NCBI RefSeq assembly: GCF_033153115.1
Contig: NW_026889799.1
Coordinates: 1,860,001-1,924,000, forward strand
DNA: 64,000 nt
From: Saccostrea echinata
Lineage: Eukaryota
Reading direction: 5' to 3'
A model generated the notes under the pieces. That model made no database searches. It worked only from the letters and a program-made list of their open reading frames with translations, and had not been told where the DNA came from. Position numbers and translations under genes: made by a program. Positions within the stretch are counted from its first letter, which is position 1. Every line of letters starts with the position of its first letter. Shown one piece after another: positions 4,331-64,000 of this stretch.

Positions 4331-6139
4331 ATTCAAAATTCAAAAATTCAATTCATATATATATATATATATGCTTTAGTAAAATGCTAAAAATTAAATT
4401 GCAACATCTCTAAGCGATCCGCAGTTCCATCTGTTTTGTCCATTTAAAAAAAACAAACATCGTATAGTTTACTATTGCTCAAAGAAATGCTAATTAACGA
4501 AGGTATATTTTATACAACAAAGAAACACACAATTATGCAAACATTTTGACAATTAAATACACGTGTACTCTAAACCTAATGAAAAATGGTTTTTGAAGTC
4601 ATTTGACACCAATCATAACGCTCAGAAATATTCAACACTGGGTAATCCGACACACTGTCTAATCCGACTTTGTTTTTCTTTCCCGCAGCATGTCGGATAA
4701 GACAGGTTTCACTGTAATAGTAAAGTCCTAAAAAGAAACGCCCATCCTTGTAAAGGATGTATTTTCTATCTAAAAAATTCGCCGATATTATCATTTGGCA
4801 CCTTAACTGTACTGCGTAAATGATTTGTCTTTTTTCTTTATGCATAAAGTCCATTGAGGGTCTAGGAGTTAAGGAGATAATTCATAATACAAGATGAAGC
4901 AAGACAGCGTGCCCTAATTAAGAGACAATTAAGTGCTCTGCATTAAAAATTGAAGACTCTAAATTTCTTTGATTAAAATTTCAGTTAGAGAAAATTAAGT
5001 TCTGATTTTCTGATCGTCGAAGATTTTACTGCGTCGCAAATTTTTTTACTGTGGCGCACGCATAAAATTTGAATTTAAATTAAAATACTGTATCTGAGGA
5101 AATTCTACTGTGTCGGGGCGGGCACAGTAAAACAACTCATGGAAAACCCTGTTAAATAGTATTATCTTTCAGACTTATTTAACGTTTATCGGTAATCGGT
5201 GAAAATAAGGTGGAATGTGTAACGGACAATATAGCTGATGTTAGAATATGTGTAGGCAATATCGTCATATAAATTGAAAAGCTTAATTTTTAAAATAGGA
5301 TGAATTTTCATTCTCAGAATCAAACTAACATTTAGAAAATATTTATTTTATTTATTCTTTTCTGTCCCTTAAAAGTGTACAACAGTCTGAGATAATGATA
5401 AGTCCAAATGCAATACAGATTAAAGAAACTCCTGAGCTTCCTATCGCTATAGAACTCTGTCGAGGGTCATAAGCACAAGTTAAACTTCTTTTAAAAGCAC
5501 TAGTGTTCATTTTGTCTACTTTGAGCTCAGAGATAATGGTTTCGAATTCTTTGATACTCTTTGTATTTGGTGTTCCCGTTGATAAAGTTGTTTGGGCAGT
5601 TGAATACATCGTACATGCAGATGTTGATGCTAAGAAGAGAAAATATGCAATGTTTATTTATATGTTTGATAAATAGTTGACATTATTCATATGAAATTAG
5701 TTAATACACTTCCTCTGTTCAAACTCATAATGTTTTCTGTCAATATCTTGATTTAGATTTATAAATATTTCCTATATTAAAGACAGATATTACTATATTT
5801 TTTATTACAAGGATGGTGTTCCATAGCACATATCTTCGTTAATTGTACCTTTCAAAAACATTGAGTTATGTAGATCAACCAGGTATATGGAAACTAAAAC
5901 CGTCCGTTTCATCAAACTTGCTGGAAACCACACTTTGGTAAACTTACATTAAGTGGTTTAAAAAAGGCAGAAGATTTTTCAAGGTCGTGGGTTTGTTAAG
6001 AAATAATGTTCGAAGGTGATATTCTATGGTTTCAAATTGTTTCGTTTCAAGACAGCATTTTGCAATTCCGTGGAAGATATTATTGGCTATCAAAGAATTA
6101 CGGGTTATGTTTGGTTCAATTTGACAGCAGATTTCATAT

Positions 6140-6700
6140 CAATTTTGACTAAGTTTACTGCGTTTTCGTGATGAATACAGAAGGCTGAAGATGGGTGTAA
6201 CAGGTCGACATGGGATTTATTATTCCTCCTAGGCACCTGATCAAAAATCTGGTGTCCTCAGTCATATGTGTTCTGGCCTGTTTTAGATTTTGCATTTGTT
6301 ACAGGATTTCTGAGAAGGACCACTGTCTGTTATGTCCATCATCTTCATTAAAAATAATGACTGAACCATAAAAAAGAACTTACATATCTATATGCATTAC
6401 CTACTATAACTGGACTCTGACTAAATGCATGGACCTAGGATTAGATAGGACTCAGAGTCAAAGTTTTCGAAGAAATATCTCGGAAGGATCTTTGATTTAG
6501 ATTTTGGCAAGCTATTGACAAATAAGTTGATAAAACAAGAATATCAACACTCTAGTATAAAGTCATCATTTCGCAAGTTCTATGGTTGATAAAATGACCT
6601 TGTCAGCAAATAATATTTTTCAATATGCGAATTTTGAGTGACGTTTTTCATACAGACTTTAAGGCCATTATTTTCATACTGTATTGTCTACTGATTTATC
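6140..6700 (+). mobile_element. Two adjacent degenerate Penelope-like 3' fragments
   Basis: Tail motif at ~6190-6260. A separate KL..Q....KSSFRKFYG..NDLVSK segment lies at ~6510-6700. Confidence 0.6.
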
Positions 6701-7579
6701 CCTCTGTAAACAAAAATCCTTCTTCTAAAGATAAGCAGGGAGTTTATTGATAAAAGTGATATATACAGGTAACTATAATTTGAGTAATTTCAAAGAGTTA
6801 AACTGAAAGACTTAGAGTTCTTAGCATTGATTATGCTTCAACAGATATTCAAAGATTTCGAAGGGATATACATGAAACCCAAGTCAACAACTAGTCAGAA
6901 CTCTAAACTAACATTAAAGAGGTTACACGTGAATAAAGCAATATTTCTGTCTCACAAGAGATGGAGGGGGATATGATGTTAAATATTTTCAAAGTAAAAA
7001 TGGTTTCTCATTCGAAAAAAAAAGAAATTAAAACCAATTAAACTATGGCTGATAACCCTCTTATATTTAAGTATTAGCACATTCATTCTGATGTCCTCAA
7101 ATTTAGTGAACAATTTCTTAGATGTCTTGTGTACAGACCTACGATTGAAAGGACAGTTTAACACATTAGAAAATGACACTTCTTGCCTATCTTCCTTAAT
7201 GAGGAACCTAATTCCTTCCTGGGTGTTAGTCACTTGAAATCAAAATGGATAGCGTGAGCGGAAAGATGAAACTGTGTTACCAAGAATGATATGAATGCTA
7301 TGTTTAGAATTGAGAATAATGAGCATTTCGGGAGCAGGAGCTAGTTTTCTACCCAAGAAAGTCGTCTGTTGTCTATAAATGACATTGTTCGATTAACAAA
7401 GTTTCCACAAGAACTAAAATTAAAAATATTTTTATCACTCTTGTGTTTGCTTTGAATCCCATGTGCAGGAACAAGAAGTATTTTGATCTAAACTGAAATT
7501 GATAGATTTTGTGTGTGTGTTTAAACTTTGGGATTTCTTTTATACAGTTCTGATTTAACTAGAAGCTGATGATACTCAC

Positions 7580-7747
7580 CTGAACAAGCCAGAGTTGTGA
7601 TAGACCATGACGTTCCATTACACAATATCTCAATTGCACCTCCATTCCCTTGGTATCCAGGTACACACGAATATAAAGTCTTACTTCCGGCTATAATCCC
7701 ATTATACATTTTTATTGAATTTGGAATATCTGGAGGCAATGTGCACT
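7580..7747 (-). CDS. Sushi/CCP exon of paralog A
   Basis: Phase 1-1 exon of 168 nt with 4 Cys and a Trp in CCP spacing: C-TLPP...YSC-VPGY...C-NGTSW...C. Confidence 0.85.
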
Positions 7748-61713: not shown

Positions 61714-61881
61714 GTTAAAGTCAAGGGAACAAAAATCATAGCATGCTCGGAAACACCATGTCACAGCTAGTGCACATGTCAAATATAAAAGCCCTCTCTA
61801 TTCTCAATCAAAAGGAATATTTTCTTGTTTAACCTTACAATTCTGAATATCGAAATCGAAACAATTTATGAATTGATTTAA

Positions 61882-62901
61882 GGAGGAGAAGGACACATGG
61901 TCACATGACTCTGTTTAACTACGTCATAGTCTCCGTTTATATAAGAGCAAAGCGTGTAAAGCATCAGTTCTTGTATAATTTTTTTGATATTTTTTTAACT
62001 TTAATAACCATCTTATATGAAAAAAATAAAAAGTTTTAAAATTCTTGTAAACATTAACAAATTATGAAAAAGATTGATCCACTCCTCTGTTTCCCTAAAC
62101 TGCGCGTCCAGCAAGTCGGTGACGTCATACACGATCTGTTAGTACAGCAAGATCATACTCAGTGAATACAGGGGCGGCGTTACTTTGTTGAAACAGGTCT
62201 TAATCAGTATATGATAAAATATTCTGAGACACGGGGAATACAAAAATTATTTTTGCATGGCTGATGACGGAAATCTTAAGTAGGTATATCTTCTTTCGCT
62301 TATTTGGCTTACATGTGACGTCATAGTTGGTTTTTCCCGTACTCGAGAAATGTAAACATGACATGTTTTTGTCATGCTTATGTCCTCTTTAACGATGTCC
62401 TGTGCAATATTGAGGTCAGCTTCACCATTCGAAATTTTTACAGTTAATCAATAATTTGAAGGACTTACATTTTAACGTAAATTTAAAAATATTGAATGAT
62501 AGAATTTTTGGTAAATTACGTTTTTTGTTATTAAAGTTGTCTTAAAAAGCACGTAATTTTTGCTATCCAGATGCAGTGTGATAGAAGAAACTTGCTTTTT
62601 CGAATTTTAAACCCTATTCATACTATGAAATATTTTAAAAGATACATGTCCACTTACATATTTTTATCTTTGCTTAAAAATCCCATTATGGACTGAGTAA
62701 TGTGCCCGTAAACATGGAGAACTAAAACTCTACATAGATACTGTAGGGCATAGTATTTGTCAATCAATATCTCTAAAATAAGGTAAGAAACCTAATGATA
62801 TAACTGCTTTAAGATATGTGGGACATACTTAATAAGAAATATACAAAATATGAAAAAAATTGAATGACAGGTACTTTTTCAGCTCAAGGTCCTTCTTCCC
62901 C
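61882..62901 (-). mobile_element. Second copy of the ~1.02-kb TTAA-flanked element
   Basis: TTAA|GGAGGAGAAGGAC ... GTCCTTCTTCCCC|TTAA; colinear reverse complement of 14414-15431. Confidence 0.82.
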
Positions 62902-64000
62902 TTAAATAGCCACATTTTATTTATGATTAATGTAAATATTCCCTTTTCAAAAACTCGAAAGGTATGTAAATGTGTTTAAGTTATAAGTTAAGTTGACATA
63001 TTTTATGAAACGCGCAAGAGTTTCATGAAAAATATACCTAAGTTGCAAGATCGCAAGATACACATCAAAAACATTCAGAAAATTTAAAAGAAAGAGTCCT
63101 TTTATTGATCTTTTTTTGTTTAAAACCAATAAAAATACTTTCTGGATTTAAACTTTTCGCTGTCCTTCATCCTTTATTTTCATTAGCATTATTTCGATGT
63201 CCTCATTGTGACGTTACTTTAGAGCACGTTTCTACGCGCTACTATGCAAAAATTCGAATCAATTTCATGGTTGGTCTAGTAAATGAACACTTAGGGCATT
63301 GTTATCCAGAGCGTTTTGTAAGAGTTAACTCTAAAGTTTTTGCTGAAAAGTATGAAATGATTTCGATCTACATATATCTAAAATTATTTTGAAACACATT
63401 CTAAAACAAATGCAGACAAATTTATATCACCTTTGTTAAATATCATTTTGGAAAAATCTTTTTTTTTTTTTTTAACAACAATTTAGCTGTATAAATAACT
63501 CTTCCTGTATGCTTTTCAGAAGGAACAATTAACAAAACACTTGTTTCGTTGTATGTTTAAGCTACTCCTCCATACGGCATGGATGCTGTACAGATATTGT
63601 GCTCTGCATTAATAAAGATCTAACTGTTATTTTTGTCATGTAAACAGAAATTAAATCGTATTTAATGAATTTGTTTTTCCCCCTTGGTTAAATTCCAATC
63701 TTTACATGTAACTCTCCATTCTAATTGTTTTAACTGGACTAAATGGGCAGTATTTTTGTTCAAAACGAATGGGCACCTACAGGTAATTTAATGAAGTGTT
63801 TTACATTCTGTAAAGGTAACAATAAGCTAAAGAATGGACAAATAGAAACAAAAGATTTACTTCACAATCATCTTTTAATTTTAGCAATTCGCTGTAAAAT
63901 TGTTAAGATTGTTTTGTCTATTTTATTTTACATTAATTAACGGTATTTTGACGTATAATACTAACACATTGAAAACATTTCAATGAGAAAAAAAATGAAA

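What the first reader, a model, noticed from the sequence alone, without database searches (positions are those of the whole stretch)
5352..63585. Tandem cluster of three paralogous cell-surface receptor-like genes built on an unnamed triple repeat domain
The ORF track hides this cluster because the genes are split into 52-312 nt exons. Three minus-strand copies share exon order, phases and several exact exon lengths (129 and 105 nt in all three). The ectodomain has three divergent ~120-140 aa repeats with the pattern H-x-L-x2-3-P-x2-V-x-V-[QE] ... [FE]-x-G-x-G-[ST] ... (DD) ... [YC]-G-[GV]-V-x-[YF]-G ... L-[WF]-x-P ... G-W-G ... V-x-I-R-x-W. I cannot match this to a named Pfam family. Signal peptide, repeats, CCP, TM and short tail, together with tandem duplication and strong divergence, is the profile of a diversifying recognition/adhesion or innate-immune receptor family. 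That function is inference.
Basis: partly seen in the sequence, partly recalled or inferred. Interest (0 to 1): 0.85.

Follow-up and report, generated by a model that had tools for sequence, protein, structure and literature searches.

The report
Oyster membrane proteins with three-part head
Part of a tandem array of oyster genes for surface proteins whose outer head is three copies of an unnamed beta-sandwich domain, apparently a bacterial-type trimer-forming domain fused three times into one chain; one copy in the window is intact and transcribed, and the function is unknown.

Summary
Three old paralogues lie on the minus strand and share exon order, phases and a 129-nt exon.

- **Copy B** (28622-42433) is the only intact copy. 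A spliced public contig matches it exactly and confirms exons 1b-5 with GT..AG introns. The NCBI Saccostrea echinata model LOC133203382 is 100% identical to its 3' half.
- **Copy A** has an in-frame TGA and an AG-to-AT acceptor change.
- **Copy C** has a decayed first exon with a TAA, a GC donor and no CCP exon.
- **The array is larger.** The trio sits in about 11 minus-strand copies on the same contig.

The three repeats are truly homologous (hhalign 99.9%) and match no Pfam family. Of 108 relatives of at least 330 aa, 99 carry exactly three abutting units. Relatives occur in bivalves, a hemichordate, a cnidarian and a sponge.

AlphaFold gives one rigid body (pTM 0.90). The best structural match of a single repeat is the C-terminal trimerisation domain of Pseudomonas aeruginosa pseudaminidase, with shared motifs at both ends. 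I read the head as a single-chain pseudo-trimer.

Diversifying selection is not supported: dN/dS is 0.20 against the closest paralogue. No signal-peptide exon was found for B. Another note of this scan, on other DNA of the same genome (s1-803590), may describe related proteins.

The parts
42137..42433 (-). Copy B exon 1b (297 nt, phase 1-1): most of repeat 1
   Evidence: Acceptor and donor read. The donor junction 42137|41395 is in a spliced contig. A contig of run X2 ends its match at the acceptor and runs on for 56 nt.
41267..41395 (-). Copy B exon 2 (129 nt): end of repeat 1 (..KVRIRVW..)
   Evidence: Both junctions are in the spliced contig, record 1 of run X1, with 0 mismatches.
41030..41128 (-). 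Copy B exon 3 (99 nt): start of repeat 2
   Evidence: Both junctions are in the spliced contig; sequence.
38848..38952 (-). Copy B exon 4 (105 nt): middle of repeat 2
   Evidence: Both junctions are in spliced contigs of X1 and X2.
37997..38196 (-). Copy B exon 5 (200 nt, phase 1-0): end of repeat 2 and start of repeat 3
   Evidence: The acceptor is in the spliced contig. The donor GAG|GTATAA is read.
34801..35047 (-). Copy B exon 6 (247 nt, phase 0-1): rest of repeat 3
   Evidence: It is 100% identical to NCBI model P0177.
34036..34089 (-). Copy B 54-nt phase 1-1 cassette exon (18 aa, two Cys)
   Evidence: Present in the NCBI model P0177. AG and GT sites read. Absent from the S. cucullata orthologue model P0002.
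32462..32635 (-). Copy B CCP/Sushi exon 1 (174 nt)
   Evidence: Pfam PF00084 at 22.2 bits, above the cut-off of 20.7. Splice sites.
31580..31738 (-). Copy B CCP-like exon 2 (159 nt); only the 2nd and 4th Cys are kept
   Evidence: No Pfam hit. Paralogous to the other CCP exons. The two-CCP region of the orthologue model aligns to CCP pairs.
28622..28851 (-). Copy B last exon: juxtamembrane cassette, TM segment, tail of about 10 aa, stop
   Evidence: 100% identical to P0177. Similar exons lie at 49 places in the genome.
12853..13164 (-). Copy A exon 1b (312 nt)
   Evidence: 61% identical to B. 79% identical to S. cucullata P0003.
12534..12662 (-). Copy A exon 2 (129 nt)
11342..11440 (-). Copy A exon 3 (99 nt)
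9816..9920 (-). Copy A exon 4 by homology (105 nt); the acceptor position reads AT, not AG
   Evidence: No AG lies between the upstream in-frame stop and the homologous exon start.
9426..9640 (-). Copy A exon 5 (215 nt)
7956..8208 (-). Copy A exon 6 (253 nt) with an in-frame TGA at 8085-8083
   Evidence: The genome search also reports '1 TGA' here. The orthologue P0003 has Trp at this position.
7580..7747 (-). Copy A single CCP exon (168 nt)
   Evidence: Pfam PF00084 at 21.8 bits.
5352..5629 (-). Copy A last exon (juxtamembrane cassette, TM, tail, stop)
63485..63585 (-). Copy C relic of exon 1b, with TAA at 63559-63557; the first ~60 residues of repeat 1 are missing
   Evidence: Weak tblastn match. 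Three-frame reading. No other ex1b-like match lies nearby.
58909..59037 (-). Copy C exon 2 (129 nt)
57117..57206 (-). Copy C exon 3 (90 nt); the donor at the homologous position is GC (57116-57115)
55957..56061 (-). Copy C exon 4 (105 nt)
52575..52780 (-). Copy C exon 5 (206 nt), followed by a 94-nt intron
52234..52480 (-). Copy C exon 6 (247 nt)
   Evidence: 80% identical to the CCP-less S. cucullata P0165/P0166.
51694..51917 (-). Copy C last exon (TM); it follows exon 6 directly, with no CCP exon between

Best explanation
The window holds three members of a roughly 11-gene tandem array in the oyster Saccostrea echinata.

**Architecture.** The family encodes single-pass membrane proteins. The outer part is a fixed module of three abutting beta-sandwich repeats of about 125 aa (R1-R2-R3). 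It is followed by 0-2 CCP modules, a conserved juxtamembrane cassette, one TM helix and a tail of about 10 residues.

**What each repeat is (inferred).** Each repeat is a distant homologue of the homotrimerising C-terminal domain of Pseudomonas aeruginosa pseudaminidase PA2794 (PaTD), a fold also seen at the tips of phage tail fibres and spikes.

**How the head is built (inferred).** The three covalently linked repeats fold together around a pseudo-threefold axis into one rigid globular head. This resembles an engineered single-chain C1q or adiponectin head. Because the three 'subunits' sit in one chain, they have been free to diverge, so the head surface is asymmetric.

**What it does (inferred).** The head most likely binds something: a glycan or a protein on another cell, on matrix or on a microbe. 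The short tail means any signal must pass through a partner protein or through shedding.

**Status of the copies.**
- Shown: copy B is intact, spliced and transcribed.
- Shown: the repeats are homologous and come in threes.
- Shown: the model is confident, and PaTD is the best structural match.
- Inferred: copies A and C are decaying copies or null alleles.
- Inferred: homology to PaTD, the pseudo-trimer geometry and the binding function.
For: **Gene and transcript**
- Spliced contig with 0 mismatches and GT..AG introns.
- No second 100% copy of the B exons exists in the genome, so the contig is not a retrocopy.

**Array**
- ex1b, ex6 and TM-exon matches recur on the minus strand of C50:1.79-2.05 Mb.

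**Repeats come in threes**
- hhalign 99.9% between R1, R2 and R3.
- 99 of 108 relatives have exactly three abutting units, and one has six.

**Rigid body**
- A triple-only relative, P0066, gives pLDDT 90.8 and pTM 0.90. The B orthologue P0002 gives pLDDT 86.

**PaTD match**
- VIA-align Z 8.6, rmsd 2.4 A, 96 residues over chain 331-438 of 3h6j; Z 5.4 with P0066.
- Foldseek E 3e-4, probability 0.98, for 3h6j/2w38 as the top two hits.
- The family profile hits only these two PDB sequences, E 0.02-0.05. The aligned motifs are P-D-F-E-S-D-W..H-G-L..P..V-V-V and a weaker, sub-threshold ..R-V-R-A-W at the chain's C-terminus.
- PaTD is used as an autonomous trimerisation domain (PMC9147764).

**Pseudo-trimer**
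- Several of the few whole-model matches are three-in-one-chain assemblies. These are single-chain C1q, adiponectin and Cbln1 heads and herpesvirus dUTPases, with 153-231 aligned residues across model residues 16-391. Neuropilin b1b2/a2b1b2 chains are also in this list.
Against: - Sequence similarity to PaTD is borderline (E 0.02-0.05). A two-sequence profile does not find it.
- Whole-model matches to single-chain trimers have low Z (2.2-3.2). I had no coordinates, so I could not measure the symmetry.
- The complex test of the three separated repeats gave no verdict.
- No signal-peptide exon was found for copy B, and the NCBI models of the A and B orthologues start inside exon 1b.
- No ligand, no expression pattern and no experiment exist for any member.
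- PaTD itself is only known as an oligomerisation domain, so a binding role for the head is not implied by homology.
Confidence: 0.6

Rival explanations
1. One reading: a rapidly diversifying innate-immune or pattern-recognition receptor family. The triple-repeat head would act as a variable recognition surface.
For: - Tandem expansion to about 11 copies, and 31 ex1b-like loci genome-wide.
- CCP modules are common in complement-type proteins.
- Paralogues in the window share only 40-60% identity.
- Gene birth and death is visible, since A and C are decaying.
Against: - dN/dS of B against its closest paralogue is 0.20 in the head, and no exon exceeds 0.32.
- A and B keep one-to-one orthologues in another Saccostrea species at 73-90% identity per exon.
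- The same module sits in matrix-type proteins with VWD, EGF, collagen, cadherin and laminin-EGF in non-molluscs. That argues for a general structural or binding module.
- No expression or challenge data were found.
Confidence: 0.2
2. A carbohydrate-binding (lectin) head of the H-type-lectin kind. H-type lectins are trimeric beta-sandwiches that bind sugar between protomers, and the three fused repeats would recreate such interfaces.
For: - The Atlas feature search lists a cluster carrying H_lectin / Gp53-like_C at 0.80, and phage clusters at 0.90-0.93.
- Helix pomatia agglutinin aligns 80 of its 99 residues to R2. The Discoidin I H-lectin domain aligns to R1 (Z 2.3-2.4).
- A phage tail-fibre protein matches one repeat (probability 1.00, 124 columns).
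Against: - No Pfam PF09458 hit in any of 52 members.
- The Z scores are at noise level.
- The Atlas score of 0.80 is below the tool's own trust level.
- The repeats have about 125 residues and more strands than the ~100-residue H-lectin domain.
Confidence: 0.15
3. The head is only a structural cap or spacer, a stable globular stopper inherited from an oligomerisation domain. Specificity would lie in the partner domains (CCP, VWD, EGF and others).
For: - The one characterised relative, PaTD, is known only for oligomerisation.
- The module combines with very many different domains.
- CCP-less and CCP-bearing paralogues coexist.
Against: - Some relatives consist of a signal peptide plus the triple module only (P0066, P0037). 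Those would have no other functional part.
- R1, R2 and R3 each keep position-specific conserved residues across bivalves, for example the D-D-D motif, which is mainly in R1. That suggests a functional asymmetric surface.
Confidence: 0.15

Closest known systems
Trimerisation domain of Pseudomonas aeruginosa pseudaminidase PA2794 (PaTD; PDB 2w38, 3h6j, residues ~331-438)
   Same: Same beta-sandwich fold over nearly the whole domain (96 residues, rmsd 2.4 A, Z 8.6). Shared motifs lie at the first strands and, more weakly, at the last strand. Both come as sets of three.
   Different: PaTD is one copy per chain and forms a homotrimer of a bacterial enzyme. Here three diverged copies lie in one chain of animal extracellular proteins. 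Sequence similarity is borderline (E 0.02-0.05).
C1q/TNF-type globular heads, including engineered single-chain C1q and adiponectin (5hkj, 4dou, 5kca)
   Same: Overall arrangement: three beta-sandwiches packed as a compact head at the far end of the protein (211-231 residues aligned). Bivalves also expand C1q-domain genes. One sponge relative (P0026) has a collagen stretch before the head, as C1q does.
   Different: No C1q Pfam hit. Z is only 2.8-3.2. The strand topology of the single domain matches PaTD, not the C1q jelly roll. The natural protein is a single chain rather than three chains.
H-type lectins (Helix pomatia agglutinin 2ccv; Discoidin I 2w94; Pfam PF09458)
   Same: Small trimeric beta-sandwich, with weak structural and language-model similarity. 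A mollusc context exists for HPA.
   Different: No PF09458 match in 52 members. Z is about 2.3. The repeat is longer than the H-lectin domain. Sugar binding is untested.
Distal domains of phage tail fibres and tailspikes (e.g. Pseudomonas phage phi2 tail fibre; LKA1 gp49; CBA120 TSP4)
   Same: Single repeats align to these trimer-forming distal beta-sandwich domains. The Atlas feature search also points to phage proteins.
   Different: No PHROG family matches the repeats. Scores are weak. The phage proteins are homotrimers.
Proteins that automatic annotation names 'Sushi domain-containing' or 'SVEP1-like' (e.g. Magallana gigas K1PQX6), and the 'VWDE-like' proteins of Ptychodera flava
   Same: These are true family members. 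They carry the same triple module with Sushi, or with D8C, VWD and EGF.
   Different: The names reflect only the partner domains. The triple module in them is unannotated, and Pfam's Ig_VWDE covers a different region (residues 562-652).

Membership tests
PaTD-like trimerising beta-sandwich (PA2794 C-terminal domain) | Fold match covering the whole domain | tested here: met
   3h6j_A gives Z 8.6, rmsd 2.4 A and 96 aligned residues over chain 331-438. Z is 5.4 with the second model. 3h6j and 2w38 are the top two Foldseek hits at E 3e-4 and 7.8e-4, probability 0.98 and 0.95.
PaTD-like trimerising beta-sandwich (PA2794 C-terminal domain) | Significant sequence homology | tested here: inconclusive
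   These are the only PDB sequences hit by the family profile, at E 0.02-0.05. Motifs agree at the first strands and, sub-threshold, at the C-terminus. A two-sequence profile misses it. HHpred against PaTD relatives could not be run.
PaTD-like trimerising beta-sandwich (PA2794 C-terminal domain) | Assembly of three domains around a threefold axis | tested here: inconclusive
   Exactly three abutting units in 99 of 108 proteins. pTM 0.90. Whole-model matches include single-chain trimers, but at Z 2.2-3.2. The complex test gave no verdict. I had no coordinates to measure symmetry.
Sushi / CCP (Pfam PF00084) | Pfam match above the gathering score, with four Cys | tested here: met
   A's CCP scores 21.8 bits and B's CCP1 22.2 bits against a cut-off of 20.7. 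B's CCP2 has no Pfam hit and only two Cys. Copy C has none.
H-type lectin (Pfam PF09458) | Pfam match | tested here: not met
   No hit in the window exons or in 52 family members at E up to 1. There is only Z 2.3-2.4 structural similarity and an Atlas score of 0.80.
C1q / TNF superfamily | C1q Pfam match, or jelly-roll domain match | tested here: not met
   No Pfam hit. Only the global three-domain arrangement is similar, at Z about 3.
Type I (single-pass, N-out) membrane protein | N-terminal signal peptide | tested here: inconclusive
   None was located for copy B. A transcript contig continues 56 nt upstream of the ex1b acceptor into sequence outside 42436-43400. The candidates from a scan are unconvincing. 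Relatives P0021, P0169 and P0066 start with hydrophobic leaders.
Type I (single-pass, N-out) membrane protein | One hydrophobic TM segment near the C-terminus and a short tail | tested here: met
   The last exon of A, B and C holds an uncharged hydrophobic run of about 23 residues, followed by 8-13 residues and a stop. No TM predictor was run.

The most novel reading that the evidence does not exclude
The R1-R2-R3 unit is an ancient animal extracellular module that has no name. It is present from sponges and cnidarians to hemichordates and bivalves. It arose when a bacterial or phage-type homotrimerisation domain was triplicated into one chain. The result is a natural single-chain 'heterotrimer' whose three faces could diverge, and it serves as an asymmetric ligand-binding head, analogous to heterotrimeric C1q. 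It has been shuffled as a unit next to Sushi, TSP1, VWD, EGF, collagen, cadherin and PAN domains.
Probability: 0.35. Interest if true: 0.7.

Novelty: new variant of a known kind. Interest (0 to 1): 0.55.

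Why it matters
- At least 264 sequence clusters at 50% identity, in at least four animal phyla, carry a 370-residue module that no domain database names. It hides behind labels such as 'uncharacterized', 'Sushi domain-containing' or 'SVEP1-like'.
- If the reading is right, it is a clean natural example of an obligate homotrimer turned into a single-chain pseudo-trimer. Protein engineers do this by hand for C1q, adiponectin and TNF ligands.
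- It links an animal cell-surface module to a bacterial and phage oligomerisation fold.
- For oyster biology it defines a tandemly expanded surface-protein family that can now be tested for ligand binding and expression.
- For annotation, the array is fragmented in the current NCBI gene models, with 5'-truncated and chimeric models. Two of the three copies in this window should be flagged as probable pseudogenes.

Tried and rejected
- **Joined model left out.** Exons were searched one by one by reference. Natural database orthologues served as proxies for the whole protein: P0002 for copy B, P0003 for copy A, P0177 for the 3' half of B.
- The genomic context of the unnamed environmental relatives (P0001, P0017, P0024, P0073) could not be seen, so it stays open whether any is bacterial.
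- **Prokaryote search.**
  - The search for related loci with alignment A3 had no stretch conserved enough.
  - With P0001 it found no relative in the prokaryote species set.
  - A degenerate DNA pattern for the peptide PDFESDWF gave 15 bacterial loci. About 9 are expected by chance on my estimate, and none encodes the domain.
- **PHROGs.** No family matches the repeats. Only the collagen stretch of the sponge protein hits tail-fibre families.
- **Complex test.** Complex prediction on the three separated repeats gave no verdict. The partner's own fold was uncertain and the alignment was not used. This is not evidence either way.
- **First fold searches.** The Foldseek and VIA searches with the B-orthologue model were swamped by its two CCP modules. 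A triple-only relative was folded to get round this.
- **Signal-peptide scan.** The scan upstream of A, B and C gave only weak candidates. Short-peptide searches with leaders of relatives found nothing.
- **Literature.** A search for six gene identifiers of relatives found no paper. The original PA2794 structure paper (PubMed 19166860) is not held. That it describes the domain as an Ig-like trimerisation domain is from my memory. Its use as a trimerisation domain is cited from PMC9147764.
- **Retrocopy rejected.** A processed retrocopy as the source of the spliced contig is rejected, because only one 100% copy of the B exons exists in the genome.
- **Ig_VWDE rejected.** Pfam's Ig_VWDE is not the name of the repeat. 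It maps to another region of the hemichordate proteins.

Full report
**1. What is in the window**

The window is AT-rich animal DNA (GC 28-38%). I compared all stop-free segments of 25 aa or more with each other. This pairs three sets of short minus-strand segments, at E 1e-6 to 1e-42 (tblastn). Reading the DNA at each segment gives AG/GT-bounded exons with matching phases.

At the DNA level the copies no longer align, apart from exon 2 at 74% between copies A and C. The duplications are therefore old. Between and inside the copies lie transposon remains.

**2. Copy B is a real, expressed gene**

I laid two public runs on 37900-43400. One contig of 1589 nt (run X1, depth 10, 0 mismatches) maps as 42135-42200 | 41265-41393 | 41026-41126 | 38848-38948 | 37995-38196. 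Every skipped part ends CT..AC on the plus strand, which is GT..AG on the minus strand.

After allowing for the stated cut ambiguity, these are exactly my exons:

| Exon | Coordinates | Length (nt) |
|---|---|---|
| 1b | 42137-42433 | 297 |
| 2 | 41267-41395 | 129 |
| 3 | 41030-41128 | 99 |
| 4 | 38848-38952 | 105 |
| 5 | 37997-38196 | 200 |

The contig's remaining 990 nt fit exon 6, the CCP exons, the last exon and a short 3' UTR. Run X2 has independent contigs over the same junctions.

Only one 100% copy of the B exons exists in the genome. The contig is therefore cDNA and not a retrocopy.

The NCBI protein P0177 (Saccostrea echinata LOC133203382) is 100% identical to B from the middle of exon 6 to the stop. 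The window's contig has the same length (3,579,812) as the contig recorded for that protein. The organism is therefore S. echinata. P0177 also contains an 18-residue stretch encoded by a 54-nt phase 1-1 exon at 34036-34089, with good splice sites. The S. cucullata orthologue model lacks it.

The 5' end of B is not settled. A contig of X2 stops matching at the exon 1b acceptor and continues for 56 nt that do not lie within 42436-43400. So an upstream exon exists, but I could not place it.

**3. Copies A and C are damaged**

Copy A:
- In exon 6, TGA replaces the Trp codon of the conserved L-W-x-P motif (8085-8083). The S. cucullata orthologue P0003 has Trp there.
- The acceptor of exon 4 reads AT where B and C read AG. 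No other usable AG lies downstream of the in-frame stop.

Copy C:
- Its exon 1b survives only as a 100-nt relic. The relic lacks the first ~60 residues of the repeat and carries a TAA.
- The exon 3 donor is GC.
- There is no CCP exon.
- Exons 2-TM of C are otherwise open. Its nearest relatives are CCP-less S. cucullata proteins, at 52-80% identity.

I read A and C as decaying copies or null alleles. Reads of this species could overturn that for the TGA.

**4. The array is larger than three**

Searching the whole assembly exon by exon finds ex1b-, ex6- and TM-type exons recurring on the minus strand of the same contig, from about 1.79 to 2.05 Mb. That is roughly 11 genes, of which A, B and C are numbers 4-6. 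A further 20 or so ex1b-like loci lie elsewhere.

The last exon (juxtamembrane cassette plus TM) also occurs at 49 places, including next to large unrelated open frames. It appears to be a shuffled cassette.

**5. The repeat module**

A profile of exon 1b (copies A and B) against 1.84 billion representatives finds 264 clusters at E up to 0.001, most with three matched stretches.

Named members are all 'uncharacterized', 'Sushi domain-containing', 'SVEP1-like', 'Apple domain-containing' or 'VWDE-like'. They come from:
- **Oysters:** Saccostrea, Crassostrea/Magallana, Ostrea, Pinctada.
- **Scallops:** Mizuhopecten, Argopecten, Pecten.
- **Clams and mussels:** Mactra, Ruditapes, Tegillarca, Mytilus.
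- **Unionids:** Potamilus, Sinanodonta.
- **Other phyla:** the hemichordate Ptychodera, the cnidarian Nematostella and the sponge Oscarella.

Orthologues in S. cucullata:
- P0002 is the orthologue of B, at 76-90% identity per exon, and the boundaries of its aligned pieces fit my exon boundaries.
- P0003 is the orthologue of A.

I cut the family alignment at the repeat borders and compared the three blocks. hhalign gives 99.9% probability (E 1e-33 to 1e-36) over about 117 columns.

With the three block profiles, 99 of 108 family proteins of at least 330 aa have exactly three directly abutting units. One has six (two triples). The few others are truncated or have split hits. In bivalves each unit best matches its own position, so the triplication predates their radiation.

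Pfam finds nothing on the repeats. This holds for the window exons, for 14 chosen relatives and for all 52 members of alignment A3 at E up to 1. Partner domains are Sushi, TSP1, HRM, collagen, PAN, VWA, D8C, VWD, EGF, laminin-EGF, F5/8C, LamG, ILEI, fibrinogen-C, cadherin and TIG.

**6. Structure**

- The B orthologue P0002, folded with 48 aligned relatives, gives pLDDT 86 and pTM 0.77.
- A relative that is only leader plus triple module (P0066, 396 aa) gives pLDDT 90.8 and pTM 0.90, all-beta. Such a pTM for three domains means the model fixes their mutual arrangement.

Against 48,161 PDB representatives, the only high non-CCP match of P0002 is the C-terminal domain of the P. aeruginosa pseudaminidase (3h6j_A residues 331-438). 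It gives Z 8.6, rmsd 2.4 A and 96 residues, aligned to repeat 2. With P0066 it is again first, at Z 5.4. Foldseek puts 3h6j and 2w38 first and second (E 3e-4 and 7.8e-4, probability 0.98 and 0.95).

Independently, the family sequence profile hits only these two PDB sequences (E 0.02-0.05). It aligns the family's opening motif to P-D-F-E-S-D-W-F...H-G-L..P..V-V-V. A second, sub-threshold stretch aligns the closing motif to ..R-V-R-A-W, at residues 433-437 of the 438-residue chain. Copy B itself reads F-I-S-D-W-F...H-S-L..P..V-D-V and K-V-R-I-R-V-W.

Taken singly, the sequence evidence is borderline. Together with the fold match I consider homology likely. This domain is used by protein engineers as a free-standing trimerisation domain (PMC9147764).

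The remaining whole-model matches have low Z, but several share one feature: they hold three like domains in one chain. They are single-chain C1q, adiponectin and Cbln1 heads and herpesvirus dUTPases, with 153-231 residues aligned across model residues 16-391. Neuropilin b1b2/a2b1b2 chains also appear in these lists.

Single repeats also align weakly to several other domains:
- Phage tail-fibre, tailspike and baseplate domains.
- H-type lectins.
- A language-model search also points to phage proteins, and weakly to H_lectin.

**7. Reading**

The constant number three, the absence of linkers, the rigid model and the trimer-forming relative all fit one picture. A homotrimerising beta-sandwich was triplicated in one chain and now folds on itself as a pseudo-trimer. 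This forms the membrane-distal head of these proteins.

I could not measure the symmetry, because no coordinates were available to me. The complex test gave no verdict.

Function is inferred only. A distal globular head on a CCP stalk with a ~10-residue tail suggests binding without intrinsic signalling. Position-specific conservation, such as the acidic D-D-D motif kept mainly in R1, suggests an asymmetric functional surface.

**8. Test of 'diversifying'**

I aligned B exon by exon with its closest paralogue (C50:1826689-1837117) and summed Nei-Gojobori counts.

| Region | dN | dS | dN/dS |
|---|---|---|---|
| Head | 0.125 | 0.623 | 0.20 (0.07-0.29 per exon) |
| CCP | 0.129 | 0.408 | 0.32 |
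| Last exon | 0.068 | 0.421 | 0.16 |

This is purifying selection overall. Site-specific positive selection is not excluded.

**9. Verdict**

The corrections are:
- Only one of the three copies is intact.
- The cluster is part of a larger array.
- The signal peptide is not found.
- 'Diversifying' is not supported.
- The 'unmatched' domain does have a solved relative.

The genes are already in NCBI as fragmentary 'uncharacterized' models. What is new is the identity and architecture of the module. I rate it a new variant of a known kind, with moderate interest.

Noticed in passing
G000:C50:1826689-1858384 (outside the window); protein P0004: NCBI model P0004 (S. echinata LOC133203377) begins with a stretch resembling copy A's TM exon (72% identity). 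It then continues with repeat exons 77-89% identical to copy B. On my reading it joins the TM exon of one array gene to the repeat exons of the next. Either read-through or chimeric transcripts occur in the array, or the gene models are wrongly merged.
   Followed up: partly
window 28622-28851 and 49 places genome-wide: The last exon carries a juxtamembrane motif (N-T-S...R-S-L..A.D-P-R.S...I-G), a TM segment and a short tail. It recurs at 49 loci, some next to open frames of about 1000 aa in unrelated genes. It looks like a shuffled stalk-TM cassette.
   Followed up: partly
window 34036-34089: A 54-nt phase 1-1 cassette exon encoding 18 residues with two Cys lies between repeat 3 and CCP1 of copy B. 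It is present in the S. echinata model, absent from the S. cucullata orthologue, and absent from the closest paralogue.
   Followed up: partly
window 14407-15425 and 61888-62908: Two copies of a 1-kb element, 87.8% identical and in inverted orientation. One lies upstream of copy A and the other between copy C's exon 2 and its exon-1b relic.
   Followed up: no
window 20922-21304 / 46497-46878, and 21942-22098 / 47275-47430: Direct repeats of 93% and 82% identity lie a few kb upstream of copies A and B. They are far more alike than the coding exons, so they are probably recent transposon copies rather than part of the old duplication.
   Followed up: no
window 29190-30110, 30640-31000, and inverted at 59180-59890: A tandem array with a unit of about 150 bp lies in the intron between CCP2 and the last exon of copy B. 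A related inverted copy lies upstream of copy C's exon 2.
   Followed up: no
window 54157-54663 (+): A 168-aa open frame that I take, by eye only and without running a family search, for a Tc1/mariner-type transposase fragment. It lies inside the long intron of copy C.
   Followed up: no
window 23000-27170: A mobile element with a tyrosine-recombinase-like open frame and an internal 86-bp array lies between copies A and B. It was already noted by the scan.
   Followed up: no
proteins P0001, P0017, P0024, P0115, P0139 (environmental assemblies): Intron-free giant proteins (up to 6381 aa) from metagenome or run assemblies carry the same triple module next to cadherin, TIG and bacterial-Ig-type domains. 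P0001 has two triples joined by a Pro/Thr-rich linker. Whether any is bacterial could not be determined.
   Followed up: partly
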